NCBI RefSeq assembly: GCF_036365525.1
Contig: NC_090399.1
Location: forward strand, 14,941,558-15,005,557
Direction of reading: 5' to 3'
Length of the DNA: 64,000 nt
Origin: Heterodontus francisci
Taxonomy: Eukaryota
Shown here: positions 1,404 to 55,257 of the stretch, piece after piece
Position numbering within the stretch: position 1 is the first letter of the stretch
Layout of the letters: every line of letters begins with the position of its first letter
Notes under the pieces: model-generated
The model's input: only the letters and a program-made list of their open reading frames with translations
What the model was told of the DNA's origin: nothing
The model's database searches: none
Made by a program: the position numbers and the translations under genes

Positions 1404-3551
1404 GTCTACCGACGTTCTTTAGAATTGGGAACGTGAGTGTGTGTTAATGGATGGAGATGATTGCGCACCTAAGAATCTCCTGAGGGCTCACAGTAGATAA
1501 GGAAATGAAGTCGTGAAGGACAGTGAAGAGTGTTATCATGTAAGGCTTGTACTTTTATTTCTCTATGATATATTACAATTAGAATGAAGGTTTTTTGAAA
1601 ATAATGTTTGTGATTCCCAGATCACTGTGAAGCAATGAAACCCGCTGCCCTGCTGTGGACCTGGATGCTACTCTTTAGTAAGCTATTTGTTTTCTTACTA
1701 CACTTCACTGTTGTGTAGTCTGAGAAAGTTAAGTAACTGGTGGTCTTGAAGTATATGGGGAAATGGAAACAAATTTGGCATAATGATGTTATCCCAGCTG
1801 TTGTAGTAGCCCATACAAGGAAGAATGATGTCACTTTGAACATCTAATTGCCACGAGCATTTGTCTTACAGCGACAACTGCTAGGAAGATCAAAGTGTTT
1901 CAAACACCACCTTCCATTGAGGCGAGCGAGGGAGAGACTGTCCATCTTCTCTGCACCTACAGCACATCTCACGGTCAACGGATCGGGGCTTTCTCTTGGT
2001 ACAAAAACGTAAAAAACGGAACAGGAGATACCAGAGTAACTAATACATCCGAAAAATACTCGGGTAGGATAATGGAGGCGGACAGACCCTCTTTCAAAGC
2101 CAATCGAAACGCTTCTATCGCGATCACAAATGTGAAACAGGATGACTCAGGTGTTTATTACTGTCAGGTGGAGATAGTATTGGTCGCGAAAGAGTGTGGA
2201 CCAGGAACCATGTTAACAGTTAAACGTAAGTCTTATACGGAGAGAAAAGAGAGTAAGAATGAGAATGTGTATGTGTGTGAGAGAGATAGACGATATATAG
2301 GCAGATAGAGCGAGAGAACGAGAGAGATGGATGATAGACAGATAGATAGATCGATGGATAGACAAACAGATCGATAGATAGATCGATAGAGAGTCAGACA
2401 GTTATACGATTAGACAGACAGACTTATAGATAGATAGACAGATCGATAGATAGATAGATAAACAGACATACAGAAAAATAGACAGATAGATAGATGATAG
2501 ATAAATAGACATACGGAGTGATCGACAGATCGATTTGAAAAACTCCATAGTTATTCCATCTCTTTTTCACATTAGAAAATGTTTACTGGTTTAAACATTT
2601 CAACTTAATGCATGAGGATGACTATCTTGCAAACTGCTGCATTTCATGAAATAATCTCCATCTTAACATCATAGCTTTCAATGAATGAACGAAGACAAGC
2701 ATGTCACAAGACACACAGCTGCCAAAGTATTCAGTGCAACTAGTAGCCAACCTGCATGTAAAATAATCAGCCCAATAAATGGCCCCCACTGGCCATATGT
2801 ACTTGATAGTGAATATATAATCTTCATTACATTTCATGGTCCAATGGTACATGACCGGATTGTAAAAAAAATTCTAGCCATAATTCTGAACATGTTCATT
2901 TATCAAATCAGAAGGTAACATCACTCAACGTTTTTGAAAAGATATATGGCACTGAATGGATGGGTAAATTATTAATGCAAAAAACATGAACAGGAATTGT
3001 ACAAGCGAATGAAGACATTGCATTAAGTAAAGCATTTTGTGAATATATAGTAAATAATGGGTATCTCTAATTACATTGAGAATAGCAAGCTAAAATCTAG
3101 GGCGAAATAGATATCTGCCTTTATTGAGAGATAACAGAGGAAGATAACACTCGGATTCAAGACGAACTAACAAGAGGAATCATTAGTACAAAGCTGGAAT
3201 ACCACTCTGAATACAGGGAGACCTGGTCTGAACAAATGAGTGCAGGGCTGTTAAAGGAAATGGGTACCAAGCTGAGTAAATATTGCAATGAGCCGCTGGA
3301 GTAAACTAAAGGAAGTAATTGCTGATTTGACTGTTTCATTCTCCATAGAGCAAAAACAACCGGATAACAGTGGAAGTTCTCTGCTTTGGCAGCTGATGGT
3401 CGTAGGAGTGAAACTTGCAGTGTTTGTTGTGATCATCATTCTAACAATTTCCCTCGTACATTTCTGCGGATCTGGAGGTTCTCCTGTGACAATCACTGCA
3501 AAGAGAGAGGGAATTGAGCGAAGCGGCAAGTGTGCGATGGAAAACGGTTAA
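1352..3551 (+). CDS. NCR3: NKp30/NCR3-like VJ-type Ig receptor, activating type; join(1352..1403,1872..2225,3349..3551), about 202 aa
   Basis: Three phase-1-compatible exons sum to 609 nt: signal peptide, V domain resembling human NKp30 along its length, and a TM with Lys. The symbol means NCR3-family, not proven orthology. The 3' end of the model is uncertain. Confidence 0.75.
1872..2225 (+). CDS. VJ-type Ig V-domain exon of receptor 1
   Basis: Acceptor ttacag ends 1871 and donor gtaagt starts 2226. The exon has B-strand Cys (LLC), WYK, DSGVYYC and a J-like GPGTMLTVK in one exon. IGAFSWYK, RVTNTSEKYSGRI and CQVEI parallel NKp30 IGSVTWFR, EVRNGTPEFRGRL and CRVEV. Confidence 0.93.
2325..2533 (+). 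repeat. Imperfect (GATA/GACA)n microsatellite in receptor 1 intron
   Basis: Directly visible tagata/tagaca tandem repeats. Confidence 0.9.
3349..3551 (+). CDS. Stalk/transmembrane/short tail exon of receptor 1 (TM contains Lys)
   Basis: Acceptor ttcattctccatag ends 3348, phase 1. Translates QQKQPDNSGSSLLWQLMVVGVKLAVFVVIIILTISLVHFCGSG... and reads through to TAA at 3549-3551. The HFC at the TM end is shared with receptor 2. Confidence 0.82.
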
Positions 3552-28541: not shown

Positions 28542-28581
28542 ATGCCTCGAGGTACTTTAATTGGTGTATTGCTGATCTCTG
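28542..28581 (+). CDS. Leader exon of receptor 2 (MPRGTLIGVLLIS-)
   Basis: Strong acceptor ending 28527, ATG at 28542 and phase-1 donor G/gtgagt. Splices to give the signal MPRGTLIGVLLISAAALA followed by DIKVTQS. Confidence 0.85.
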
Positions 28582-31500
28582 GTGAGTCTTGAATTTGTTT
28601 GCTACATTTTTTCCATATTTGCTCATGGGATGTGAACATCGGTGTCTAGGCCAGCATTTATTGCCCATCCCTAATTGCCCTTGAGAAGGTGGTGGTGAGC
28701 CGCTTTCTTGAACTGCTGCGGTCCTTGTCATGTAGGTACACCCACAGTGCTGTTAGGGATGCAGTCCCAGGTTTTTGACCCAGTGACACTGAAGGAACAG
28801 TGATATAGTTCCAAGTGACTTGGAGGGGAACTTGCAGGTGATGAGGTTCCCATGCATCTGCCGCCCTCGTCCTTCTAGGTAGTAGAGGTTGTGTGTTTGG
28901 AACATACTGTCGATGGAGCCTTGGTAAGTTGTGGCAACGCATCTTATACATGGTAGACACTGCTGCCACTGTGTATCAGTGGTAGAGGGAATGAAAGTTT
29001 AAGCTGCTGGATAGAGTGCCAAACAAAGCGGGCTCCTTTGTTCTGGATGCTGTCGAACTACTTGAGTGTTGTTGGAGCTGCACTCATCAGGCAAGTGGAG
29101 AGTATTTCATCACAGTCCTGACTTGTACCTGGTAGAAAGATGGTGGACAGGCTTTGTAGAGTCAGGAGGTGAGTTACTCATTGCAGTATCCCTACCCTTC
29201 GTCTGCTCTTGTAGCCACAGTATGTATATGGCTGGTCCAATTAAGATTCTGGTCAATGATAACCCCTAGGGTGTTGATGGTGGGTGATTCTGTGATTGTA
29301 ACGCCATTGAATGTCAAGGAGAGATGGCTAGATTTTCTCTTGTTGGAAATGGTCATTGCCTGACACTTTTTGTTGCACGAATGTTACGTGCCACTTATCA
29401 GCCCAAGCCTGGGTATTGTCCAGGTCTTGTTGCATATGGACACAGGCTGCTTCAGTATCTGAAGAGTTGTGAATGGTGCAGAGCATTGTGCAATCATCAG
29501 CGAACATCTCCACTTCTGACCTTATGATTGAAGGAAGGTTTTTGAAGAAGCAGCTGAAGATGGTTGGGCCTGGGACACTACCCTGAGGAACCCCTGCAGT
29601 GATGTCCTGGAGCTCAGATGATTGACCTCCAACAACCACAAAAATCTTCCTTTGTGCTAAGTATGACTCCAACCAGCAGAGTGTTTTCCCCTTATTCCAA
29701 TTGACTTCAATTTTACTAGGGCTCCTTGATGCCATACTCAGTTAAATGCTGCCTTGAGGCCACAGGCCATCACTCTCACCTCACCTCTGGAGTTCAGCTC
29801 TTTCGTCCATGTTTGTACCAAGGCTGTAATGAGGTCAGGAGCTGAGTGGATCTGATGGAATCTACACTGAGCATCAGCAAGAGGGTTACTGCTCAGTAAG
29901 TGCTGCTTGATAGCACTGTCGATGACACATTCCATCACTTTGCTGATGATTGAGAGTAGACTGATTGAGTGGTAACTGGCCAGATTCGATTGCTGGGTTG
30001 ATGCCAATTTTGAAGCTGTACTAGCACAGCTTGGGTAGGAGCATGGCTAGTTCAGGAGCACAAGCCGTAGAACCATAGAAAAACTACGGCACAGAAGGAG
30101 GCCATTCAGCCTATCATGTCCGTGCCAGCTGAACAAACTAGCCACCCAGTCTAATCCTACCTTCTAGCACCTGGGCCACAGCCTTGCAGGTTACATCACT
30201 TCAATTGCATGTCCAGGTACCTTTTAAAAGAATTGAGTGTTTCTGCATCCACCACCATTCCTGACAGTGAATTCCAGACACCCACCACCCTCTGGGCGAA
30301 AATGTTTTTCCTCATGTCCCCTCTAATCCTTCTCCCAATCACCTTAAATCTGTGTCCCCTGGTTATTGACCTCTCCGCTAGGGGAAACAGGTCCTTCCCG
30401 TCTGCTCTATCTAGGACCCTCATAGTTTTATACACCTCAATTAAGTCACCCCTCAGCCTCCTCTGTTCTAGGGAAAACAACCCTAGCCTATTGAATCTTT
30501 CCCCATAGCTGCAACTTTCAATCCTTGGTAACATTCTTGTCAATCTCCTCTGTTCTCTCTCCAGAGCAATTATGTCCTTCCTGTAATGTGGTGACCAGAA
30601 CAGTATGCAATAGTCCAGCTGTGGTCTAACCAGTTTTTTATACAGTTCCAGCATTACATCTCTGCTTTTGTATTCTATACCTCATCCAATAAAGGAAAGC
30701 ATTCCATATGCCTTCTTCACCACTCTATCTACCTGTCCTGTCACCTTCAGGGACCTCTGGACAAACACTCCAAGGTCTCTCACTTCTTCTACCCCTCTGA
30801 ATATCCTCCCATTTATTGTGTATTCCCTCGCTTTATTTACCCTCCCCAAATGCATTACCTTACACTTCTCTGGATTGAGGGCTGCAGCTAAGATATTATC
30901 AGAGCCCATAGCCTTTGCTGTATCCAATACATTCAGCCATTTCTGATATCACGTGGAGTGAATCGAATTGGCTGAAGACTGGCATCTGTGATGCTGGAAA
31001 CCTCAGGAGGAGACCGAGATGGATCATCCACTCTGCACATCTGGCTGAAGATGGTCGCAAAGGCTTCAGCTTTGTGATTTTGCACTGACGTTGCTGGGCT
31101 CCGCCATCAATCAGGATGGAGATGTTAGTGGAGCCTCCTCCTCCCCTGGTTAGTTAAGTGTCATGCCACCATTCATGACTGGATGTGGCAGGGCTGCAGC
31201 GCTTTGATCTGATTTGTTGGTTGTGGGTCTGTTAGCTCTACTTATAACATGCTGCTTCCATTGTTTTGCATGCATGTAGTCCTGTGTGTATCTTCACCAG
31301 ATTGGCACCTCATTTTGAAGTATACCTGGTGCTGTTCCTGGCATGCTCTCCTATGCTCTGCATTGAACTGGTAAAGTAATGCCGGACCTTCTCTATAATC
31401 AACCGCAGTCCTTACTGTTTTCGGACTTGCAAGCATATTGACCCAGCCAGCATCAAGGAGCAGGCAATATACAATGTGCAACTTGGATGGGAACTCGGAG

Positions 31501-34500
31501 GTAATGCTGCACCCTCAAAATTGCTGCCCAGTATTAGGTGTTGCAGCAGAAGAAAATGCTGGTCACCCCAAGACGTTAATGGTCAGAGCTTCAACAGTAA
31601 TGTTACTGCTGATGGTCAGGGGGTAGAGGTGGGATTTCTTTGTTTGAATTGATCATTACCTTCATTTGAAATATCTGCAAGTTGTCACACCAAATAGTTT
31701 AAAGTCCCGGGTCTATTTGTCTAACAAGAATACTTAGCATCTATGTCTTTCAGCTGCTGCTCTTGCCGACATCAAAGTAACTCAAAGCCCACAGAATATC
31801 GAAGTAAGGGCAGGAATGAAGATCCATCTCTCCTGCAGTTTTAATAGGTTTGCAGAGTTCCGAATTTTTTCCCACCACTGGTACAAGCAAGGATTAGGTC
31901 GTGAAAAGTCAGCAGTTACAAACACGTCTGCAGAATTTATTGGTCGAGTTTTGAAGGAAACTCAAGGCTCTAAAACCAACATTACAATCTTGGATGCAAA
32001 ACAGAATGATTCGGGGACGTATTATTGTGAAGTGGAAATATTTAATTTTGCCAGAGGAACTGGAATAGGAACACGGGTAACAGTAAAAGGTATGCTTCTA
32101 TTCTGCTACTAGTATCTCACTTTACATATATTCTTTTCAAAAAACAAATCCAACTACTTACACCTCAAACACTGACTCTATAATTTTGGAATAAGAATGA
32201 TGAAGAACATTTATAAATCTCGAGACCCTGGAAATGAATGGTGCTTTACAAAATTTTATAGTTAAATACACTGCTGTATAAAAGTATAAATTTCCACATT
32301 CATTCTAAATTAACCTGGAGCATAGGATTAAATGTGTAAATTGATTAATCAGAGCTTAATCTATCTGAGATTTTGATTTTTTTTCTGGCCAGATTGTCCT
32401 TTTTTATATATTTGTCAGAATGTATTATATTTTGACAGTATAACTCAGCTGTTATTTAGTTACCTTATATCTCTCTGATTTTTGTTTGACTACTGAATCC
32501 GAATTCGGTAAGATTATCCGCATGTATGACCTTTCCACTCAGCCCTATCTCACCATCACCTCCTGGGACCTCTCAACTGCCTCGGATTCATTTCAATGCT
32601 TATCTATCAGCCAATATTGGTTGAACAGAAATTTCCTTCGACTAAATATTGGAAAGACTGAACCCACAAACCACAATCCATCTCCACAGTTTCCATCCCT
32701 GGGAATTGTCTTCAATTGAGTCGGACATTTCACAACCCTGGTGCTGTGTCTGACCCTGAGTTGAGTTTCTGACCAACATCACCAAGACTGCCTACTTCCA
32801 CCTCCATAACATCGCTCAACTCCACCCACACCTCAGCTTATCTGCTGCTGAAATCCTCTTCCATGTCTTTGTTACATCTAGACTTGACTATTCCAATACT
32901 CTCCTGGTCAACCTCCCATCTTTCACCCGACATAATCTTGTGCTCATCCTCAACTCTATTGCCCATAAGTTAACTCACTCCAAATCTCATTCACCAGGAT
33001 CCTTGTACTTGGTGATCTTCACCGGCACCCTGTCCGATAGCACCTCAATTTAAAAATCCGCATCCTTGTATTCAAATCCCTCCATGGCTTCCCCCTCCCT
33101 ATCTACCTCGCCTCCTCCAGCCAGATAGCCTTCCCAGATACTTTCCCTCCTGCAATTCTGGCCTGCTAATGTTAACCGTTCGACCATAGCCTTCATCTGA
33201 CAAGACCCTAAGATCTGGAATTCCTTCCCTCAGCCTCTCCATCTCTCTTCTTTTAAGGTGTTCCTAAAAATCTACCTCTTTGATCAATCATTTGGTCATC
33301 TTTCCTTGTGTCTCCTTCTTTGGCTCAGTGTCAACAAATGGCACTGAGCCAAATACGCACACAGATAGTTACACACACTCAGATAGATTTATTAACGTGA
33401 ACTTGTGTAACTGGGCAGAACCCAAAAGGGCCCCAGAAAATATAATTGATTGAAAGAGAAAGTAAATTTTTATTTCCTAAAAAAATGATTTAAAAGTGGT
33501 AATTTTCCAAAGACCCAAACACTTGGAATTGGTGAAGAGAACTTGGATGTCATTAATAGTAATCATTTCATTTTCCACAGTGGGACCTGACAATACCATG
33601 GACAGTCATTCTAGTGTTCGAAAGAAGAATTTGATCATTCTGGCTTCAGTGCTGGGGGGCATTGTATTGATCCTGTCCTCAATGGCACTTCTTGTGGTCT
33701 TGCACTTCTGCAAGCATCGAGGTAATTCTACTGAATGTATCACGGTGGCGATTAGTGAACAAATGTGTTTAGGGTCAAAAGCAGCCTTGGCTTTCAATGC
33801 ATGTGGTACCTTTAGCCAGTGAACGCATCATTTCCAAAAGTGTACCATGATAGGCCGAATAGCCTACTGCTGTGCTATATCATTCTAGATAGAACAGATC
33901 AGGACCTGCTGACATCACAAGGTAACTTACAACCAAAGTAATGTAGCTTTGAAGCATACACACTGTCGTCCTTTAGTAAACTCAGCATAGCAAGGTGCTA
34001 CAGACAGGAACACGTGACTCCTGACAACGCAGCCCAGCGCTGACATCATCAGAGCACTCCCCGCTTCGCACATGTGCAGAATGGACTCTTGCTGTCAGTA
34101 TGGCGCTGCGCATGAGCAGCCTACATCAGCACCCAGCTTGCCAGGACTAATTTGCGCATGCGTGCAAAACACGGCATCATGTACTGCGACGCCTGCTCAC
34201 CGCTCGCTCCCCATCACGCCTCGCCACTTCTCCTCCCTCGGTCGCTCGCTCCCCCTTTCACCCCCTCTCTCCCCCACCTACCTGTGGGCCACTCGCTCCC
34301 AGCCTAGCCACTTCCTCCCCTCTGCTCTCTCGATCTGTCCCACTTCTGGATCCCACACCCTCCTGCCTCTGGGCCCCGCCTTTCTTCCCCACACAGGGGA
34401 AGCAGGGCAGAGAGAGAGAGAGTGACAAGATGGGCAGGGGAGGGGAGGGAGACTGTGAGCAGGACAGAGCAGGGAGTAGAAGCAGGAGGGAGTGGGAAGC

Positions 34501-36856
34501 AGAGGCAGAGCAGAGGGGATGAAATGGCGAGGCCAGGGACGAGTGGCCCGCAGATGGGGTTTGAGGGTGGGGGGGGGTTGAAGCGGGGAGCGAGTGATCG
34601 AGGGGGGAGAAGGGGCGAGGCGAGAAGCAAACGGCGAGCAGACGGGTGCGGGCAGCAGTGGAGGAGAGAGGCGCGATGGCAGGAGGGAGTGGGGTACAGT
34701 TGGGGGCAGGATGGAGGCAGCAATTGCAGCCACCATGGGCATTTGGATTTCATTTGTTTTTGTTATTGTGATAAGCTGAGCAGCGCCATCTTTATTACTG
34801 GCAGCTGCCAAAAAATGTCACCGACAGTGACATTTCGGTGCATGAGGCTTCATTTGCGCATGTGCAAGTACTGCGCCACCTAGTGGTTGAGTTTTCAGCA
34901 AACGCAGCCACCAGATAAATTGTTCCCGTGTTGGTGGTTGAGGGATAAACATTGGCTGCAGCACTGAGGAGAACTCACTCACTCGTCCTCCAGTAGTGGT
35001 GTGTGATTGTTTACATTGACAGTAAAAGATCCCAAGGTGAGAGGGCAGACAGGGCCTTGGTTCCGTCTCTCCTCAGACAGCACCTCCAACACTGCAGCAC
35101 TTGTTCAGCACTGAAGGATTTTGTGTTCAAGGTTTTGGAGTGGGACTTGAACCCACAATCTTTCAACTCTCAGTGCTCCAATTGAGCATATGTCAAGGTT
35201 TGTAACATGACACAGTGAAATGCTGTTCTAACTCTAGTACTATAAATAAAGTATAACTTTTCCCAATGATAGAAGTTAGGTAAACTGGCCTATAGTTTCC
35301 TGCTTCCGTTTACCTCCTTTCTTGAATAGGGGCATTATATTTGAGTATTTTCAAATCTGCTAGGACCGTTCAAGATTTCAAGGAATTTTGGAAGAATGCA
35401 TTCTCCATTTCTCCATTTCTACAGCCACTTCTTTTAAATCCCTCGGATGCAGGCCATCAGGACCAGGAGACTTGCCAACCTTTAGTCCCATCAGTCCCAT
35501 TAGTTTTGCCAGTACTTTTTCTCCCGTGATAGTGCTTATTTTATGTTCTGCCCTCCCTTTTGCCCAATATTATGTTTTAATAGTATCACGCAAAATCATC
35601 TTATTCTGAAAATGATAATCTGTCCATAATGATCTTTTTTGTCGCACTGAATTTCTTCACCGAATATATGTAACATGTTTATCTGAAATATTTTATAGAT
35701 AGAACACCAGCAGCTCAAACACAAGAACAGGTAAGAATGTAATTCCAAATTATAATTATAGTCAGCTTTATTCCTTAACAGACTGTTGCTTCTGGTTAAA
35801 GTCAAGGGCACGATCTCGGCATTTATGAAAGCATGGGTTAGCAACACAGATTACCAGCTCCATCAGTCAATCCTCCGAATTACTGATTATCGTTCTCCTT
35901 AGCTTTAAGACAGCGTCAATTTCAAACGATCTGGTTGCTTCTCCATCATTGTCTAGTGTCTGAAAATGAGCATTTTCGTTGGCAAGATTAGTAAAATAAT
36001 CATATTAACTGAAAATCACAAACTTGAAGCCATTGCCGTGCAATATTTCGGTAATGACTGAGATTTTGTATCTGAATTCCATTTCGGTCTGCAATGCACA
36101 GGAGATGGTGGCATTGTGGTAATGGCACTAGATTAGTAATCCAGAGGCCCAGGCTAATGCGGGTTCAAATCCACCACAGCAGCTGGCGGAATTTAAATCC
36201 AATTAATTAGCAATAATCTGGAATTGAAAGCTAGTCTCAGTGATGGTAATCACAAAACTATCATCGATTATCATAGAAACCCATCTGGTTCGCTAATGTC
36301 TTTCAGGGAAGGAAATCTGCCGTCCTTACCTGGTCTGGCCTACATGTGACTCCAGACCCGCAGCAATGTGGCTGACTCTTAACTGTCCTCTGAAATGGCC
36401 TAGCAAGCCACTCAGTTGTCAAGGGCAGTTAGGGACCGGCAACAAATGCCCGCCTTGCCCGCATCCCAAGAAAGAATTAAAAAGGAATTGTTGACGCAAA
36501 AAAATACTTCCTGTGGTGTTGTTACGGGAGTAACCATAGCATTGTAATTTCATTTTTTTCTTTAAAAATGTGTTTCATTTGAGGGCGTTACATCGAATAA
36601 TATCGTTTATGCTGACCTGCACATCAACAAACCCAAAACGCATGGTCCTGGGAGTCTCAGGAAGGATCGACTTGCGAGCCCTCCCTCACGGGCGTTTGAA
36701 CAGGAAGACGCAGTTGTATATGCGACAGTGAGGCCGGTTATTAGAAAAAAGAATAAACAACGGGCGCCGGTGAGGCCTCCAAATGAGATGGAAGAAGCTG
36801 TGGTGTATGGGAGAATTCGGACTCCAGTCCACAATGATGTCTCAGGCATGGAGTAG
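28542..36856 (+). CDS. NCR3: NKp30/NCR3-like VJ-type Ig receptor, inhibitory type with three ITIM-like motifs; join(28542..28581,31754..32089,33581..33721,35699..35730,36584..36856), 273 aa
   Basis: Five GT-AG-bounded exons with compatible phases (1,1,1,0) sum to 822 nt with no internal stop: signal peptide, V domain, neutral TM and a tail with IVYADL, VVYATV and VVYGRI. The symbol means NCR3-family. Confidence 0.82.
28615..31370 (-). mobile_element. CR1-group LINE (second family) in receptor 2 intron, with nested CR1 3' fragment at about 30067-30878
   Basis: Minus ORFs AGVPQGSVPGP...MFADDC and SLLSIISKVME. The nested ORF 30196-30654 reads LYKKLVRPQLDYC. Confidence 0.88.
31754..32089 (+). 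CDS. VJ-type Ig V-domain exon of receptor 2
   Basis: Acceptor gtctttcag ends 31753 and the donor is G/gtatgc. Translates DIKVTQSP...LSC...WYK...VTNTSAEFIGRV...DSGTYYCEVEIFNFARGTGIGTRVTVK, close to NKp30 CRVEVLGLGVGTGNGTRLVVE. Confidence 0.93.
32505..33335 (+). mobile_element. L2 LINE 3' fragment
   Basis: WLNRNFLRLNIGKTE, catcaccaagactgcctacttccacctc and agacttgactattccaat (SRLDYSN) are L2 C-terminal motifs. Confidence 0.8.
33581..33721 (+). CDS. Stalk/transmembrane exon of receptor 2 (no charged TM residue)
   Basis: Acceptor ttttccacag and donor G/gtaatt. Translates VGPDNTMDSHSSVRKKNLIILASVLGGIVLILSSMALLVVLHFCKHR. Confidence 0.9.
34008..34909. repeat. GC/CpG-rich unclassified foldback insertion inside a minus-strand DeuSINE-like element (33915-35190)
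   Basis: 34215-34328 is the imperfect reverse complement of 34508-34622. tgcgcatg motifs occur near both ends, and SINE sequence resumes on either side. Confidence 0.6.
34873..34886 (-). promoter_or_regulatory. CTCF-like motif
   Basis: GCGCCACCTAGTGG is the reverse complement of CCACTAGGTGGCGC, matching the CTCF core consensus. Occupancy is unknown. Confidence 0.4.
35699..35730 (+). CDS. 32-nt cytoplasmic mini-exon of receptor 2 (DRTPAAQTQEQ)
   Basis: Acceptor ttttatag and strong donor CAG/gtaaga. The phase 1-to-0 change is exactly what links the TM exon to the ITIM exon. Confidence 0.75.
36101..36483 (+). mobile_element. tRNA-derived SINE sharing its 3' tail with the LINE family at 8905-11225
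   Basis: A/B-box-like head (ggtggcattgtggtaatg, gggttcaaatcc) and tail aagggcagttagggaccggcaacaaatg. A second copy lies at 59041-59456. Confidence 0.8.
36584..36856 (+). CDS. Terminal cytoplasmic exon of receptor 2 with three ITIM-like motifs
   Basis: 90 open codons after tgtttcatttgag: GVTSNNIVYADLHINKPKTHGPGSLRKDRLASPPSRAFEQEDAVVYATVRPVIRKKNKQRAPVRPPNEMEEAVVYGRIRTPVHNDVSGME*. Confidence 0.85.
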   Translation, partial: GVTSNNIVYADLHINKPKTHGPGSLRKDRLASPPSRAFEQEDAVVYATVRPVIRKKNKQRAPVRPPNEMEEAVVYGRIRTPVHNDVSGME

Positions 36857-37091
36857 GCAGTTTTAGAATTCAGGTGCTGACTTGAAGGTATTGAAGAATG
36901 GATTCCCTTTCTGGCTTATCCATCCCCTGAGAAAGATGACCATTGAATATGTCTGTACTTCACTTATAGTATGGCATTGACTTCATTATCGTCCTTTACT
37001 CGCAGTCTTTACTCAGAGAAATATTTGCAAGTGGATGTGTGCTCGGGCAGTAAGGGTGGGAAAAGTTATTATCTGACTCATTGTTATGAAG

Positions 37092-37097
37092 AATAAA
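37092..37097 (+). terminator. Candidate polyadenylation signal of receptor 2
   Basis: First AATAAA after the stop codon (about 235 nt downstream). Confidence 0.4.
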
Positions 37098-37574
37098 AAT
37101 GTTGCCAGATTATGCTGTACTTGTAACGGTGAGGCCAATGGCATTCAAGGTTATTTATGTACAACTGGGGCCAGTCATTTCCCTCGATAGCTTTTGCAGA
37201 GTTAAATGCGGAAAACGGGACGTTCCTGCCCCAGATGCCTCCGCCTCCAAAAAAGCTTCCAGCATCTCGCCGTCTTGCTGAACATTCAAATGTGTTGAAC
37301 ACCTGAACAGCTTGAAGATCCTGCACTTACCTCAGAGATGCAGACCAAACTCACCAAGAAATTTAGGAGCTGTCTGCTCCAGTCTTTTAACGGTATGATC
37401 GGTCTTAATTACTGCCAAACAACCGCTCTAGCACAGGAAATTAACTTTTACAAGTGTAGAGTCTCATTCCTTCAGAATGTAATCACTATTGGAGACTTAG
37501 ACCCGAATTTTGCTGTCATAAGGGCAGCTCTATCAGAGCTCACACTTACTGCAGGGGAACAATGTCTGGAAAAG

Positions 37575-38075: not shown

Positions 38076-41000
38076 AAAGAACAAAGTACAGTACAGCACA
38101 GAAACAGGCCATTCGGCCCTCCAAGACTGCGCCGATCCTGATGCCTGCCTAAACTAAAACCTTCTGCACTTCCAGGGACCGTATCCCTCTATTTCCATCC
38201 TATTCATGTATTTGTCAAGATGCCTCTTAAAACATCGCTATCTTATCTGCTTCCACCACCTCCCCCGGCAGCAAGTTCCAGGCACTCACCACCCTCTGTG
38301 CAAAGAAATTGCCTCGCACATCCCCTCTAAACTTTGCCCCGCTCACCTTAAACCTATGTCCCCTAGTAACTTCCACCCTGGGAAAAAGCTTCTGACTATC
38401 CACTCTGTCCATGCCACTCATAACTTTGTAAACCTCTATCATGTCGCCCCTCCACCTCCGTCGTTCCAGTGAAAACAATCCGAGTTTATCCAACCTCTCC
38501 TCGTAGCTACTGCCCTCCAGACCAGGCAACATCCTGGTAAACCTCTTCTGTACCCTCTCCAAAGCTTCCATGTCCTTCTGGTAGTGTGGCAACCAGAATT
38601 GCACGCAATATTCTAAGTGTGGCCGAACTAAAGTTCTGTACAGCTGCAGCATGACTTGCCAATTTTTATACTCTACGCCCCGACCGATGAAGGCAAGCAT
38701 GCCGCATGCCTTCTTGACTACCTTATAGGGCGGCACAGTGGCGCAGTAGTTAGCACCGCAGCCTCACAGCTCCAGCGACCCGGGTTCAATTCTGTGTACT
38801 GTCTGTGTGGAGTTTGCAAGTTCTCCCTGTGTCTGCGTGGGTTTTCTCCGGGTGTTCCGGTTTCCTCCCACAAGCCAAAAGACTTGCAGGTTGGTAGGTA
38901 AATTGGCCATTATAAATTGCCCCAAGTATAGGTAGGTGGTAGGGAAATATAGGGACAGGTGGGGATGTGATAGAAATATGGGATTAGTGTAGGATTAGTA
39001 TAAATGGGTGGTTGATGGTCGGCACAGACTCGGTGGGCTGAAGGGCCTGTTTCAGTGCTGTATCTCTAAACTAAACTTATCCACCTGCATTGCCACTTTC
39101 AGTGACCTGTGGACCTGTATGCTCAGATCTCTCTGCCGGTCAATACTGCTAAGGGTTTTGCCATTTACTGTATACTTCTCACCTGCATTAGACCTTCCAA
39201 AATGCATTACCACACATTTGTCCGGATTAAAATCCATCTGCCATTTCTCCGCCCAAGTCTCCAACTGATCTATATCCTGCTGTATCCTCTCACAATCCTC
39301 ATCATTATCCGCAACTCCACCAACCTTTGTGTCGTCCGCAAACTTACTAATCAGACCAGCTACATTTTCCTCCAAATCATTTATATATACTACAAGGAGC
39401 AAAGGTCGCAGCACTGATCCCTGTGGAACACCACTAGTCACATCCTTCCATTCAGAAAAGCACCCTTCCACTGCTACCCTCTGTCTTCTATGACTGAGCC
39501 AGTTCTGTATCCATCTTGCCAGCTCACTTCTGCTCCCGTGTGACTTCACCTTTTGTACCAGTCTGCCATGAGGGACCTTGTCAAAGGCTTTACTGAAGTC
39601 CATATAGATAACATCCACTGCCCTTCCTTCATCAATCATCTTTGTCACTTCCTCAAAAAACCTCAATCAAATTAGTGAGACACGACCTCCCCTTCACAAA
39701 ACCATGCTGCCTCTCGCTAATAAGGTCGTTTGTTTCCAAATGGGAGTAAATCCTGTCCCGAAGAATCCTCTCTAATAATTTCCCCACCACTGACGTAAGG
39801 CTCACCGGCCTATAATTTCCTGGATTATCCTTGCCACCCTTCTTAAACAAAGGAACAACATTGGCTGTTCTCCAGTCCTCTGGGACCTCACCTGTCGCCA
39901 ATGAGGATGCAAAGATTTCTGTCAAGGCCCCAGCAATTTCTTCCCTTGCCTCCCTCAGTATTCTAGGGTAGATCCCATCAGGCCCTGGGGACTTATCGAC
40001 CTTAATGCTTTGCAAGACACCCAACACCTCCTCCTTTTTGATAATGAGATGACTGAGACTATCTACACTCCCTTCCCTAGGCTCATCATCCACCAAGTCC
40101 TTCACTTTGGTGAATACTGATGCAAAGTACTCATTTAGTACCTCGCTCATTTCCTCTGGCTGCACACATAGATTCCCTTCTCTGTCCTTGAGTGGGCCAA
40201 CCCTTTCCCTAGTTACCCTCTTACTCTTTATATACATATAAAAAGCCTTGGGATTTTCCTTAATCCTGTTTGCCAATGACTTTTCATGACCCCTTTTAGC
40301 CCTCCTGACTCCTTGCTTAAGTTCCTTCCTACTGTCTTTATATTCCTCAAGGGATTCGTCTGTTCCTAGCCTTCTAGCCCTTACGAATGCTTCCTTTTTC
40401 TTTTTGACCAGGCTCACAATATCCCGCGTTATCCAAGGTTCCCGAAACTTGCCAAACTTGTCCTTCTTCCTCACAGGAACATGCTGGTCCTGAATTCTAA
40501 TCAGCTGACGTTTGAAAGACTCCCACACGTCAGATGTTGATTTACCCTCAAACAGCCGCCCCCAATCTAAATTCTTCAGTTCCTGCCTAATATGGTTATA
40601 ATTAGCCTTCCCCCAATTTAGCACCTTCACCCGAGGACTAATCTTATCCTTATCCACAAGTACCTTAAAACTTATGGAATTATGGTCACTGTTCCCAAAA
40701 TGCTCCCCTACTGAAACTTCGACCACCTGGCCGGGCTCATTCCCTAATACCAGGTCCAGTACGGCCCCATCCCTAGTTGGACTATCTACATATTGTTTCA
40801 AGAAGCCCTCCTGGATGCTCCTTACAAATTCTGCCCCTTCCAAGCCCCTAGCACTAAGTGAGTCCCAGTCAATGTAGGAGAAGTTAAAATCACCCACCCA
40901 CACAACCCTGTTACCTTTACATCTTTCCAAAATCTGTCTACATATCTGCTCTTCTACCTCCCGCTGGCTGTTGGGAGGCCTGTAGTAAACCCCCAGCATC

Positions 41001-42860
41001 GTGTCTGCACCCTTCCTATTCCTGGGCTCCACCCATATTGCCTCGCTGCATGACCCCTCCGAGGCGTCCTCCCGCAGTACAGCTGTGATATTCTCCTTAA
41101 CAAGTAATGCAACTTCCCCACCCCTTTTACATCCCCCTCTATCCCGCCTGAAGCTTCTAAATCCTGGAACATTTAGCTGCCAATCCTGTCCTTCCCTCAA
41201 CCAAGTCTCTGTAATAGCAACAACATCATATTTCCAAGTACTAATCCAAGCTCTAAGTTCATCTGCCTTACCTGTTATACTTCTCACATTGAAACAAATG
41301 CACTTTAGACCACCAGTCCCGCTGTGCTCCGCAACATCTCCCTGCCTGCTTTTCCTCTTAGTCTTACTGGCCTTATTTACTAGTTCCCCCTCATTTATTT
41401 CACCTGCTTCCTACTGCTCTGGTTCCCACCCCCCTGCCACACTAGTTTAAACCCTCAGGAGTGACGCTAGCAAAACACGCAGCCAGGATATTTGTGCCCC
41501 TCCAGTTTAGACGGAACCCGTCCTTCTTGTACAGGTCCCATCTGTCCCTGAAGAGATCCCAATGGTCCAGATATCTCAAATCCTCCCTTCTCCACCAGCT
41601 GTTCAGCCACGTGTTTAGCTGCACTATATTCCTATTTCTAGCCTCACTGGCACGTAGCACAGGGAGTAATCCCGAGATTACAACCCTGGAGGTTCTGTCT
41701 TTTAACTTTCTGCCTAACTCCCTAAACTCCCCCTGCAGGACCTCGCCACTCTTCCTGCCTATGTCGTTGGTACCGATGTGTACCACAACCTCTGGCTATT
41801 CACTCTCCCCCTTCAGAATGCCCCCTGTCCGTTCAGAGACATCCTTGACCCTGGCACCAGGGAGGCAACATACCATCCTGGAGTCTCTTTCACGTCCACA
41901 GAAATGCCTATCTGTGTCCCTGACTATAGAGTCCCCTATAACTATTGCTCTTCTGCACTTTGTCCCTCCCTGCTGAACAACAGTGCCAGCTGTGGTGCCA
42001 CTGCTCTGGCTGCTGCTGTTTTCCCCTGATAGGCCATCCCCCCCCAACAGTATCCAAAACGGTATACTTGTCACAGAGGGGGATAGCCACAGGGGATTCC
42101 GGCACTGACTGCCTGCCTCTTCTAGCGGTCACCCATCTATCTGCCTGCACCTTGGGTGTAACCACTTCTCTAAAACTCCTGTTTATGACGGTCTCTGCCA
42201 CCTGCATGCTCCTAAGTGCATCCAGTTGCCGCTCCAACCGATCCATGCAGTCTTAGAGGAGCTGCAACTGGGTACACTTCCTGCAGATGTAGTCCTCTGG
42301 AACGCTGGAAGCGTCACGGACCTCCCACATCTCACAGGTGAAGCACTTCACCCCTCTAACTGACATTTCTAGCACTAATTAATAAATTAATTTAAAATAA
42401 ATAAATACTTATTAAATCCTTACTAAATTGTTATAATTAACTATATGGTCCCTAGTGCTAGATTCCTACTATAAATATTAAATGCAAACTAAATACAGTA
42501 ATCTCCCCTCTGGTTTAGTTACTCTACTTATTAGTTAATTAGGGTTTTAATCAATTTTTATCAATGTTTTATTTTCAAATTCAGTAAAAAAAAAATTCCC
42601 TACCAGCCAATCAGGTCACAGCTTTCCTATGAGGTCACTTTCAGTTTTTATTTACCAGAGATAAGTTTTTTATACTTACCGGTCCAGAACTCCGCCCTCC
42701 GAGTCTTCTCCCAGTCAGCTGTGCTCTTTGGAAGCTCTCGGCTCCCCTCACTGAGGACAGGTAGGAAATGAAAGGAGCTCCTCTCTCCCTCCTTACCAAA
42801 CTTCCTCAGTTACCAAACTTCCACTGTAGCACTCAAATGCAACCCAAGTCAGCACTCCAG
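38076..42860 (-). mobile_element. Near full-length CR1 LINE (5' UTR, ORF1 esterase, ORF2 APE-RT), frameshifted, with nested SINE
   Basis: ORF1 pieces 41442-42246 (VIGDSIV, HIGTNDIG) and ORF2 39653-41287, 39052-39666 and 38227-38736 (ITETWL, GDFN, SDH, DFSKAFD, FADD). The CR1 tail is at 38076-38130. Confidence 0.95.
38727..39075 (+). mobile_element. HE1-like V-SINE inserted in CR1, TSD CTTAT
   Basis: tRNA-like head gggcggcacagtggcgcagt...gggttcaattc, V-core gtctgtgtggagtttgc...ccggtttcctcccaca, and CR1-type tail gggcctgtttcagtgctgtatctctaaactaaa. CTTAT is at 38722-38726 and 39076-39080. Confidence 0.88.
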
Positions 42861-52842: not shown

Positions 52843-55257
52843 AGTAAGCCTCCTGGATCAGCCTGGCCCTCTGGCCCTTATGCTCTTCTGCCAGTTGACA
52901 GACCAGGCAAATTGCCAGCAAGTCTTCTTTGCATTAGAGTTTGGGTCCTTTTGTCCATTTTCTTGGCAATGGAAGAAACGTCGTGAATCAAGAGGCTGAA
53001 GGTTCGGCTCCCAAAACCCTTCGACCATATTCACCAGTCGGGTATGAGGGCTGTTCCAGGAAGTGACTTTGAACACCAGAAGGCTCCTTGTTTAGATACA
53101 CACGCTCTGCAGAAGTTGGGCCTGCAGTCTTAACATGACTGGGCACTTATATAAAAGCAATTCCAAAGCAGATAGCACTGATTACTTCAGCCTCCAGGTT
53201 TCTTAGCTCAGTTCCACTGTCATTGACACAGGTAGACGCTGCCATTGACACAGGTAGACACAGGTAGACATTGTCCTTGACTCAGGTAGATTAGACCTGT
53301 TTATTCTTATCAGTTTTGCTTCCACTTCTTGCTCAATGTTTTTTGTCAGGACAGTTATGTCCTGTCTTTTATTTATTGTTAAGAAACAGGGTGGGGGTGG
53401 GGGTGGTGGTGGTGTTGAGTGTTTCGCATTTATTTTCATTTTGAAACTCGTCTGATGCACAGCTGAATTGAATTTTGTTCACAGGTTAACAATCTCTGCA
53501 CTGCTCCATTATTTTGGTGGACAATTCTTACTGTGCTCCCCTAAATATCAATTTGTTTTTTAAGTTTACATGATCAATACCAACTTAACTTCTTCGCTTT
53601 GAAACCTTTGAAATTGTGACAAGCTTGCAGACAAATTTCAACAACAGAAACCCTCTATTGTGGCTCTAACTGGAGGTAAAACATTGCAAGGCCCTTCACA
53701 GAAAGGGAATCAAACAAATATTTGATGAGCGCCACAGAAGGAGATTTTAGGAGTGTTGACTAAAAGCTTGATTAGAGAGGGCTTTATGGAAGGTTTTAAA
53801 AGGAAGAGGGGGAGGTGGAGGGGTTCAGGGAGAGAACTCTAGAGTGTGGTCTCTATATAGATATGAAGGCACAGCCACCAGAAATGGGGTGAAGGGAGCT
53901 GGGAATACGTACAGGCCATAGTTGGAGGAACACTGAGTCTTTAGATAGATGGGGAAAGGGTGAGGCTTCTTTATCCATTACCAACTGCCTCCTTAGGTCC
54001 TCTCCCTACTCCCTCCACCCTCACCTACCAGCATCTCTACCAATGGATTCTCTTTTTGACCCTGCACCGTTACCTCGAAGTGACCTATGACCCTCTCCTC
54101 AGCCTCATCTACAAGCTTCTCCTTGGCAACATCAACAACAGATCAACTTCCATGCATGCTGACAACATCCAACTCTATATCTACGAACCCCTCTCGCTGC
54201 CTCGATTGCCGACGTGTTGCCAGATACTTTTCTGACTAGGACGTGTAAAGCAGCACAAAGAGATTTGGGTGTAAAAGTACAGAAATCATGCCAAGCTAGT
54301 AAATTGGTACAAAGATCAGTCAACAGGCTCATTGAATTTCAAGGGGGCTCAAATACAAAAGGTTGGAAGCTAAGCTTGGAGTTGACCAGAGCCTTGGGCG
54401 GATCCTGTCTGGAGTTTGCATTCAGTTTGAGGTACTATGCAATAGGAAGGAAATATTGGCTTTGGAGAGATTCTGAATGAGACCAGGGCTTTGAGGGTTA
54501 AACTATAAGGACAGGCTGCAAACACTTGGCTTGGATTCCCTACAGTACGGAAGATTGAGGGACAATTTAAATCGTGGTGTTTAAACTGATAAAAGGATTC
54601 AATAAGGTAGATACAGAGAAATAATTTCCTCTGGTGGGGAAATCCTGAACAAAAGGGGCATAACGATCAGATTAGAACCTGACCATTCAGCAGCTTGACA
54701 CACAGTTGAAAAATCAGAAAACACTTTTGGTATTTACTACGCCAAAGAAAGCACAAAATTAACATTTCAGTGAGACTAAATGGAAGATTAAAAAGAACAA
54801 TTAACACAAAACATTTTCTTTGTACAATATAATTTCAACAATCACGTCTCTTAAAGTTTGAAGGCTGCAAGGTATTTCTGTAAAACACATCCGGAACATG
54901 AAAGAATAATCATAAGCTGATGATTTATTATGATGCAAATCCACTTCAGCAATGCCAATTTCGAATGCAGTGACTGGCACTTGGAATTAATTCAGAGCCG
55001 AATCAACATCATTCTCTTAAATATCAGGAATTATTAAAAGCTTATCATAGAGTCATACAGAAAGAGGCCATTCAGCCGATCATGTCCTTACTGGCTTTTT
55101 GAAAGACTAAACAAATTTGTCCCACTCCCCTTAGCCGTGTTAATTTCCCCCCCTGCATGACAGTGACAGGAATCCCATGTATTAGATCACACCATAGAGT
55201 CATAGACTGTTAGAGCACAGAAGGAAGCCACCATCGGCCTACCATTTCCATACCAGC

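What the first reader, a model, noticed from the sequence alone, without database searches (positions are those of the whole stretch)
35699..36856. Hidden triple-ITIM tail, apparently built by internal duplication
Seen: a 90-codon exon absent from the ORF track encodes IVYADL (36602-36619), VVYATV (36713-36730) and VVYGRI (36800-36817). It is linked to the TM exon by a 32-nt phase 1-to-0 mini-exon with a strong donor. Motifs 2 and 3 sit in similar modules (PP...EQEDAVVYATVRPV versus PP.EMEEAVVYGRIRTPV), suggesting tandem duplication. Established: I/V/L/S-x-Y-x-x-L/V/I motifs recruit SHP-1/SHP-2/SHIP. Inference: a strongly inhibitory, checkpoint-like receptor built on an NKp30-type ectodomain.
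Basis: partly seen in the sequence, partly recalled or inferred. Interest (0 to 1): 0.78.

Follow-up and report, generated by a model that had tools for sequence, protein, structure and literature searches.

The report
Shark NKp30-like receptor with ITIM tail
This is a real, spliced and expressed horn shark gene for a one-domain immune receptor whose tail carries tyrosine motifs of the kind that switch immune cells off, but the gene is already in the public annotation and belongs to a known shark receptor family.

Summary
All introns are GT..AG, and the longest contig has no mismatches.

The tail has three tyrosines, each in an ITIM-consensus motif. Only 5 of 100,000 shuffles of the tail give three.

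The exon is "hidden" only from an ORF list. The same 273-aa product is RefSeq XP_067865595.1, "uncharacterized protein", Heterodontus francisci.

Relatives in four other sharks, two of them named NCR3-like by NCBI, keep motifs 1 and 2 in 5 of 5 species. Motif 3 fits the consensus only in the horn shark. It is off-consensus in a sawshark and cut off in great white, basking shark and catshark.

Modules 2 and 3 are more alike than chance allows. If that reflects a duplication, it is ancient.

Inhibitory signalling is inferred, not shown.

The scan had already noted other NKp30-like ITIM genes on other DNA of this genome (s1-873546, s1-872193, s1-873569).

Verdict: a new member of a known kind, of modest interest.

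The parts
28542..28581 (+). Exon 1, coding part: ATG plus 13 codons of signal peptide plus 1 base (phase 1), donor G|GTGAGT
   Evidence: tblastn of P0001 residues 1-16 at 28542-28589. Sequence read. The X1 contig has 74 letters upstream of the V exon that do not lie in 31150-31753; 40 coding letters plus about 34 of 5' UTR is an inference.
31754..32089 (+). Exon 2: VJ-type V-set Ig domain, phase 1 to phase 1, 336 nt
   Evidence: Pfam V-set E 2.8e-13. Aligns over residues 4-111 to antibody V domains in the PDB. Contigs lie on it in X1, X2 and X3 with 0 other letters.
33581..33721 (+). Exon 3: stalk plus uncharged transmembrane segment plus membrane-proximal CKHR, 141 nt, ends in phase 1
   Evidence: Joints 32089|33581 and 33721|35699 in X1, X2 and X3. 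Translation. No D/E/K/R in the hydrophobic run.
35699..35730 (+). Exon 4: 32-nt mini-exon (11 codons with the carried base), takes the frame from phase 1 to phase 0
   Evidence: Joints on both sides, with 32 letters between, in X1, X2 and X3. An 11-residue [DE]RT...EQ segment is present in all 5 species. Without it the tail exon is read in a frame that stops after 4 further codons.
36584..36856 (+). Exon 5, coding part: 90-aa cytoplasmic tail plus stop codon. The 3' UTR continues to at least 37140.
   Evidence: Translation. Contigs lie on 36582-37140 (X1), 36582-37077 (X2) and 36582-37061 (X3) with 0 other letters. 100% identical to P0001 residues 184-273.
36602..36619 (+). ITIM-consensus motif 1, IVYADL (Y192 of the protein)
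   Evidence: Tyrosine invariant, and motif within consensus, in 5 of 5 species.
36713..36730 (+). ITIM-consensus motif 2, VVYATV (Y229)
   Evidence: Tyrosine invariant, and motif within consensus, in 5 of 5 species.
36800..36817 (+). ITIM-consensus motif 3, VVYGRI (Y258)
   Evidence: Within consensus only in the horn shark. AVYGKI in Pristiophorus. Absent from the Carcharodon, Cetorhinus and Scyliorhinus proteins.

Best explanation
The region holds the last two exons of a five-exon, expressed horn shark (Heterodontus francisci) gene. The gene encodes a 273-aa type I membrane receptor. Its parts are a signal peptide, one germline-joined VJ-type V domain of the shark NKp30/NCR3-like group, a short stalk, an uncharged transmembrane helix, and a cytoplasmic part of about 105 residues. 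The 32-nt mini-exon is needed to bring the tail exon into frame.

The conserved signalling core is a pair of ITIM-consensus tyrosines, Y192 and Y229. The horn shark also keeps a third, C-terminal one, Y258.

Inferred mechanism: ligand binding brings the receptor next to activating receptors. A Src-family kinase phosphorylates the tail tyrosines. SH2-domain phosphatases (SHP-1/SHP-2 type, possibly SHIP) dock on them and damp the activating signal.

Shown here: gene structure, splicing, expression, motifs and their conservation. Inferred: phosphorylation, the phosphatase partner, the inhibitory outcome, the ligand and the cell type.
For: - Splicing and expression: spliced, mismatch-free contigs with three GT..AG joints in X1, X2 and X3, and empty non-repeat intron bins.
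- Public model: the same 273-aa product is XP_067865595.1. tblastn puts its five pieces at 28542-, 31741-32088, 33580-, and 36581-36853.
- Ectodomain: V-set domain.
- No ITAM-like Y spacing: the tyrosines are 37 and 29 residues apart.
- Motifs beyond chance: 5 of 100,000 shuffles.
- Relatives: the tail has relatives only in shark proteins of the same architecture, 3 hits at E<=0.001 among 1.84 billion representatives.
- Conservation: Y192 and Y229 are invariant across 7 aligned sequences and 12 isoforms from 5 species. Hexamers 1 and 2 have mean pairwise identity 0.69 against 0.53 for the rest of the cytoplasmic part; random block pairs reach this in 286 of about 20,000 draws. Substitutions inside the hexamers stay within the consensus.
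- Literature: ITIMs recruiting SHP-1, SHP-2 or SHIP is stated in passages of PMC12272517.
Against: - No biochemical evidence exists.
- All RNA support comes from one sample, whose tissue is coded and whose RNA label is the tool's guess. It may be the same data that RefSeq used.
- All three motifs also fit YxxPhi endocytosis signals.
- Motif 3 is not conserved.
- In a related organism (X5, organism B), the one contig on the tail exon (depth 4.1) has an extra letter behind 36740. This gives a stop just after motif 2. The V-exon contig of that organism changes the canonical Trp and shows 17 non-synonymous to 2 synonymous differences among the 19 of 22 listed. That copy may be decaying, may be a paralogue, or the contig may be in error.
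- The AlphaFold model was unusable (mean pLDDT 36).
Confidence: 0.72

Rival explanations
1. The tyrosine motifs work mainly as YxxPhi sorting or endocytosis signals (AP-2 binding) that control surface level. They are not phosphatase-recruiting ITIMs.
For: YADL, YATV and YGRI all fit Y-x-x-hydrophobic (by reading). Nothing here shows phosphorylation.
Against: The -2 position, which matters for ITIMs and not for YxxPhi signals, is I or V in every motif 1 and motif 2 of 5 species. Acidic residues precede motifs 2 and 3, as tyrosine kinases prefer (recalled knowledge). The two roles do not exclude each other.
Confidence: 0.1
2. The gene is transcribed but on its way out. It would be a fast-evolving birth-and-death family member with little or no function in this species.
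For: - The family sits in a repeat-rich cluster with many copies (notes s1-873546, s1-872193 and s1-873873, unchecked).
- The organism B contigs show a frame change in the tail, a lost canonical Trp and 17:2 non-synonymous to synonymous differences.
- Three species have shortened tails.
Against: - In the horn shark all five exons are open with good splice sites.
- Contig depths are 43 to 410 in three runs.
- Orthologue-like proteins with the same architecture and the same two motifs exist in both shark clades.
Confidence: 0.1
3. The three motifs are a recent, horn-shark-specific internal tandem duplication that built an unusually strong inhibitor.
For: Module 2 against module 3: score 40, 0 of 5000 shuffles. 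25 of 5000 with the hexamer held in place. DNA 18 of 23 identical, reached by 18 of 5000 codon shuffles.
Against: - Module 3 with its tyrosine is present in Pristiophorus (Squalomorphii).
- Its first half (RPP.E.E...) is present in Carcharodon and Cetorhinus, so it is old.
- Module 1 is no more like modules 2 or 3 than shuffles are: 853 and 4073 of 5000 shuffles reach the score.
- Motif number does not by itself measure inhibitory strength.
Confidence: 0.08

Closest known systems
Shark NCR3 (NKp30) family genes. Kinlein et al. 2021, Immunogenetics 73:333, and Flajnik et al. 2012, Immunogenetics 64:571. I saw both only as entries in reference lists; neither text is held.
   Same: - Single non-rearranging VJ-type V domain, TM segment and tail.
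- The nearest named proteins are 'natural cytotoxicity triggering receptor 3-like' of Carcharodon carcharias (44-47% identity) and Scyliorhinus canicula (47%).
- The nearest Atlas structure cluster has the same name (TM 0.86).
   Different: I could not compare with the published nurse shark subtypes or read what those papers say about tails. Whether an ITIM tail of this type is already described there is therefore unknown to me. My recollection is that eight divergent subtypes were reported. The names on relatives are automatic.
Human NKp30 (NCR3)
   Same: [quoted passage not shown]
   Different: Human NKp30 has a TM arginine that couples to CD3-zeta or FcR-gamma, and its tail has no signalling capacity of its own (PMC6514059 passages). 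Here the TM segment has no charged residue and the tail carries its own ITIM-consensus motifs. The signalling logic is the opposite.
Multi-ITIM inhibitory IgSF receptors of mammals, such as KIR long-tail forms, LILRB, SIRP-alpha and CD22 (recalled, not from a call)
   Same: Ig ectodomain, uncharged TM segment, and two or more ITIMs some 25-40 residues apart, which suits tandem-SH2 phosphatases. Here the Y-Y distances are 37 and 29.
   Different: No sequence relationship of the tail to anything outside sharks: 3 hits in 1.84 billion representatives and no Pfam family. The resemblance is one of working principle, not of family.
PD-1 / CD28 family
   Same: A single V domain plus an inhibitory tyrosine tail. 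The Atlas feature search ranks a 'Programmed cell death protein 1 family' cluster first (0.94).
   Different: There is no ITSM (TxYxx[VI]) in the tail. The V domain keeps a J-like GxGTxVxV G strand, which passages of PMC11599192 say is generally not present in the CD28 family. The same paper found no conserved ITIM-related motifs in chondrichthyan PD-1.

Membership tests
ITIM-bearing inhibitory IgSF receptor (functional class) | Type I membrane protein with an Ig-type ectodomain | tested here: met
   V-set E 2.8e-13. Signal peptide exon and TM exon are present.
ITIM-bearing inhibitory IgSF receptor (functional class) | No charged residue in the TM segment, so no adaptor coupling | tested here: met
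   The hydrophobic run of the TM exon has no D, E, K or R.
ITIM-bearing inhibitory IgSF receptor (functional class) | At least one cytoplasmic [ILVS]xYxx[ILV] motif, conserved in relatives | tested here: met
   Three motifs are present. Motifs 1 and 2 are kept in 5 of 5 species, motif 3 in 1 of 5.
ITIM-bearing inhibitory IgSF receptor (functional class) | Tyrosine phosphorylation, recruitment of SHP-1/SHP-2/SHIP, and an inhibitory outcome | not testable with these tools
   Needs biochemistry.
NKp30 / NCR3 family | Single non-rearranging VJ-type V domain encoded by one exon | tested here: met
   One exon, 31754-32089, runs from the mature N terminus through a J-like GIGTRVTVK. It aligns end to end with antibody V-J regions.
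NKp30 / NCR3 family | Closer to bona fide NKp30 than to other V domains | tested here: inconclusive
   Only automatic names support it. PDB sequence hits are swamped by antibodies and NKp30 is not among the 60 shown. No reference NKp30 sequence could be brought in. The structure model was too poor for a fold search.
NKp30 / NCR3 family | TM arginine and signalling through CD3-zeta/FcR-gamma (mammalian definition, PMC6514059) | tested here: not met
   Uncharged TM segment. This is a feature of the mammalian gene and may not define the family in sharks.
NKp30 / NCR3 family | MHC linkage and binding of B7H6 | not tested
   The window holds no MHC marker that I identified. Binding needs experiments.
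ITAM-bearing activating receptor | YxxL/I, then 6-8 residues, then YxxL/I | tested here: not met
   The tyrosines are 37 and 29 residues apart.
PD-1-type ITIM plus ITSM tail | A membrane-distal TxYxx[VI] switch motif | tested here: not met
   None of the three motifs has Thr at -2.

The most novel reading that the evidence does not exclude
A double-ITIM tail is the ancestral, conserved state of one NKp30-like lineage across modern sharks. If so, self-signalling inhibitory NKp30 relatives are as old as the shark crown group, and mammalian adaptor-coupled NKp30 is only one surviving mode.

In this reading the C-terminal third ITIM is a tunable add-on whose presence is set by small changes in where the protein ends. 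It is kept in the horn shark and off-consensus in a sawshark. It is cut exactly before the tyrosine column in two lamniforms. It is possibly removed by a one-letter insertion in a close relative of the horn shark. Inhibitory strength would then be adjusted lineage by lineage.
Probability: 0.3. Interest if true: 0.5.

Novelty: new member of a known kind. Interest (0 to 1): 0.3.

Why it matters
The finding gives a checked, expressed example of an NKp30-like receptor that carries its own inhibitory motifs instead of coupling to an activating adaptor. Two of the motifs are conserved across both major shark clades.

That is useful for the question of how paired activating and inhibitory receptor systems, and the NKp30/B7H6 axis, looked in early jawed vertebrates.

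It is not a surprise to specialists. Shark NCR3 genes are published, the model is in RefSeq, and the scan has already met sister genes in the same cluster.

Tried and rejected
Tail exon against Pfam gave 0 families.

Tail exon in the word-indexed protein search gave no candidate. The tail region of P0001 in the same tool found only itself. These blanks reflect the tool's word and length limits. The exhaustive search did find relatives.

The genome-contig scan with the tail matched 133 patterns and none was confirmed. That collection holds only bacteria and archaea, so the call was ill chosen and says nothing.

The structure prediction of P0001 with a 7-row alignment had mean pLDDT 36. I ran no fold search on it.

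The leader exon first guessed at 31579-31622 was rejected because its donor phase does not fit (by reading). A pattern scan did not rank the true leader. tblastn with P0001 placed it at 28542.

A second three-motif segment, 53945-54232, shows no similarity to the tail by reading and was not reported by tblastn, so I took it for a chance hit.

Papers: Kinlein 2021 (PMC8273117 and by DOI), Flajnik 2012 (PMC3709836) and Ohta & Flajnik 2015 (PMC4594805) are not held. What they say on tails is unknown to me. Searches for shark/NKp30/NCR3/ITIM combinations and for Heterodontus plus NKp30 (0 papers) found no description of this gene in the searchable library. Author manuscripts are not searched there. 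Supplementary files were not consulted.
Full report
**What is there**

Reading 35400-37200 and 31300-33900 and translating confirms every coordinate of the finding.

- The stop-free stretch 36566-36856 has an AG acceptor at 36582-36583. From 36584 it encodes 90 residues and a stop.
- Its only three tyrosines sit in IVYADL (36602-36619), VVYATV (36713-36730) and VVYGRI (36800-36817). All three fit [ILVS]xYxx[ILV].
- The stretch has no start codon before the GTG at 36728, so the mechanical ORF list shows only a 42-aa piece. In that sense the exon is absent from an ORF track.
- The 32-nt exon 35699-35730 lies between an AG acceptor and a CAG|GTAAGA donor. With the base carried over from the TM exon it makes 11 codons and ends in phase 0.

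**More than chance?**

Shuffling the 90 residues gives three or more motifs in 5 of 100,000 trials, and three motifs of the stricter [IV]VYxx[ILV] form in 0 of 100,000.

Of the 385 stop-free segments of 60 aa or more in all six frames of the window, 2 hold three motifs within 80 residues. One is this exon. The other (53945-54232) is tyrosine-rich, shows no similarity to the tail by reading, and was not reported by tblastn.

**Is it spliced and expressed?**

Eleven public runs hold part of 36584-37100. Three of them, from one sample of organism A, hold 90-100% of its words. I laid X1, X2, X3 and X5 on 31150-37140.

- In X1 a single 1154-letter contig (depth 56.7) lies, with 0 other letters and 0 gaps, on 31753-32087, 33579-33719 and 36582-37140. 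It has 32 letters between the last two pieces.
- The three joints are 32089|33581, 33721|35699 and 35730|36584, all GT..AG after the tool's +2 shift. Each is seen in one contig in each of X1, X2 and X3.
- The non-repeat intron bins 32150-32549, 33750-33949 and 35750-35949 have depth 0 in all four runs. The deep intron bins are repeats laid at 90-95% likeness.
- The tool labels the runs 'RNA?' as a guess. Intron-free contigs with canonical joints and empty introns are what RNA gives.
- All three runs are one sample, so this is one biological source. It may be the very data behind the RefSeq model.
- 74 letters of the X1 contig lie upstream of the V exon and outside 31150-31753.

**The whole gene**

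An exhaustive phmmer search of the tail exon against 1.84 billion representatives gave 3 hits at E<=0.001.

| Protein | Length | Identity to tail | E-value |
|---|---|---|---|
| P0001 | 273 aa | 100% over residues 184-273 | 6e-52 |
| P0002 | 270 aa | 52% | 2.9e-15 |
| P0003 | 272 aa | 51% | 4.1e-11 |

P0001 is XP_067865595.1, 'uncharacterized protein', Heterodontus francisci.

tblastn of P0001 on the window places residues 1-16 at 28542-28589. There an ATG, 13 codons and one base precede a G|GTGAGT donor.

The coding exons are 40 + 336 + 141 + 32 + 273 = 822 nt, which is 273 codons plus the stop.

I searched my own exon translations one at a time and did not join them. The whole-protein steps used the public P0001.

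**Domains**

- The V exon is a V-set domain (Pfam E 2.8e-13).
- It aligns from residue 4 to residue 111 with antibody V-J regions and ends in a J-like GIGTRVTVK. It is thus a germline-joined VJ-type domain.
- The TM exon has a hydrophobic run without D, E, K or R.
- The tail matches no Pfam family.

**Relatives and conservation**

The full-length search added great white NCR3-like isoforms, a catshark NCR3-like protein and a basking shark protein, at 44-47% identity. Cluster look-ups gave 12 proteins from 5 species.

In the 7-row alignment, Y192 and Y229 are invariant, as are R174, T175, E182 and Q183 of the mini-exon segment.

| Species | Motif 1 | Motif 2 | Motif 3 |
|---|---|---|---|
| Heterodontus | within consensus | within consensus | VVYGRI, within consensus |
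| Pristiophorus | within consensus | within consensus | AVYGKI: tyrosine kept, Ala at -2 |
| Carcharodon | within consensus | within consensus | absent: protein ends ...LLV, immediately before the tyrosine column |
| Cetorhinus | within consensus | within consensus | absent: protein ends ...PVV, immediately before the tyrosine column |
| Scyliorhinus | within consensus | within consensus | absent: protein ends 11 residues after motif 2's tyrosine |

These rows come, which cover all 12 proteins.

The two conserved hexamers have mean pairwise identity 0.69, against 0.53 for the rest of the cytoplasmic part. Random pairs of 6-column blocks reach that in 286 of about 20,000 draws.

Heterodontus is a galeomorph and Pristiophorus a squalomorph. 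Module 3 therefore predates that split and was shortened in other lines.

A single-base change of a Tyr codon to a stop would explain the lamniform ends.

**A close relative**

In organism B (X5), one 308-letter contig (depth 4.1) lies on 36582-36887. It has 8 other letters and one extra letter behind 36740. In our frame that gives a stop one codon later, just after motif 2.

The V-exon contig of the same run differs at 22 of 290 letters. Of the 19 differences listed, 17 change the residue and 2 do not, and one turns the canonical Trp into Leu.

This may be a paralogue, a decaying copy, fast diversification, or contig error at low depth. It warns against treating motif 3, or even the gene, as stable among close relatives.

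**Internal duplication**

Residues 31-60 compared with residues 61-90 give a local BLOSUM62 score of 40, against a shuffle mean of 17.4.

- 0 of 5000 shuffles reach that score.
- With the motif hexamer held in place and only the flanks shuffled, 25 of 5000 reach it.
- At the DNA level 18 of 23 letters agree, which 18 of 5000 codon shuffles reach.
- Module 1 is not more like modules 2 or 3 than shuffles are: 853 and 4073 of 5000 reach the score.

A duplication is plausible, but it would be ancient.

Convergence is a live alternative. Acidic residues upstream and a branched aliphatic residue before the tyrosine are, as I recall, what Src-family kinases prefer.

**Mechanism**

Shown: an expressed type I receptor with a VJ-type V domain, an uncharged TM segment and two conserved ITIM-consensus tyrosines 33-38 residues apart. 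In the horn shark a third lies 29 residues further on.

Inferred: phosphorylation by a Src-family kinase, docking of tandem-SH2 phosphatases, and inhibition. Passages of PMC12272517 state that ITIMs recruit SHP-1, SHP-2 or SHIP.

The tail has no ITAM spacing and no ITSM.

Skipping the mini-exon would read the tail exon in a frame that stops after 4 codons. The 32-nt exon is therefore the gate to the signalling tail. No such skipped joint was among the joints shown; 92 joints were not shown.

**Comparison with the known**

Human NKp30 has one IgV domain, a TM arginine for CD3-zeta or FcR-gamma, and no signalling capacity in its tail (passages of PMC6514059). This protein has the opposite wiring.

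Its NKp30 affiliation rests on automatic names of relatives and on the first row of the Atlas structure search. The Atlas feature search put a PD-1-family cluster first. The J-like strand and the missing ITSM argue against PD-1.

The papers that define shark NCR3 genes (Kinlein 2021, Flajnik 2012) were seen only as reference-list entries and could not be read.

Other notes of this scan report further NKp30-like inhibitory and activating genes 0.19-0.37 Mb and 16 Mb away on the same piece. They include an 'inhibitory-type' gene with three tail tyrosines. These are unchecked leads.

**Verdict**

- The gene is a new, already annotated but unnamed member of a known kind.
- The new points here are the direct splice evidence, the conservation of two ITIMs across both shark clades, and the lineage-specific keeping or loss of the third.

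Noticed in passing
window 1859-2224 and about 3360-3470 (+): A second VJ-type V exon, 38% identical to this gene's V domain (ORF). About 1.2 kb downstream lies a TM-like stretch with a lysine inside the hydrophobic run. Together they look like an activating-type NKp30-like gene in tandem, about 28 kb upstream of the inhibitory one. Note s1-872041 proposes a pair. At 38% V identity they are not a close matched pair.
   Followed up: partly
window 31800-32089 and 36582-36887, contigs of run X5 (organism B): The related organism's contigs differ at 22 of 290 V-exon letters. Of the 19 listed, 17 change the residue, and one turns the canonical Trp into Leu. They also carry a 3-letter insertion behind 31769 and a 1-letter insertion behind 36740 that ends the frame after motif 2. 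Paralogue, decaying copy or low-depth error is not resolved.
   Followed up: partly
window 36150-36550: The intron between the mini-exon and the tail exon holds a very abundant short repeat. Summed contig depth is 29,000-90,000 in all four runs, with many partial and rearranged contigs. It is probably a SINE-type element transcribed from many loci.
   Followed up: no
window 29738-31060 (-), 38227-38736 (-), 39052-41287 (-): Long ORFs with reverse-transcriptase and endonuclease-like translations (LINE fragments) flank and interrupt the gene's introns.
   Followed up: no
window 33722-33822: Read-through past the TM exon's donor begins with residues similar to the extra segment of the longer Carcharodon and Cetorhinus isoforms (GN...). 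This suggests that an alternative downstream donor used in lamniforms is not usable here, because the horn shark frame runs into a stop.
   Followed up: no
window 53945-54232 (+): The only other stop-free segment in the window with three ITIM-consensus matches. It shows no similarity to the tail by reading and was not reported by tblastn, so I took it for a chance hit.
   Followed up: partly
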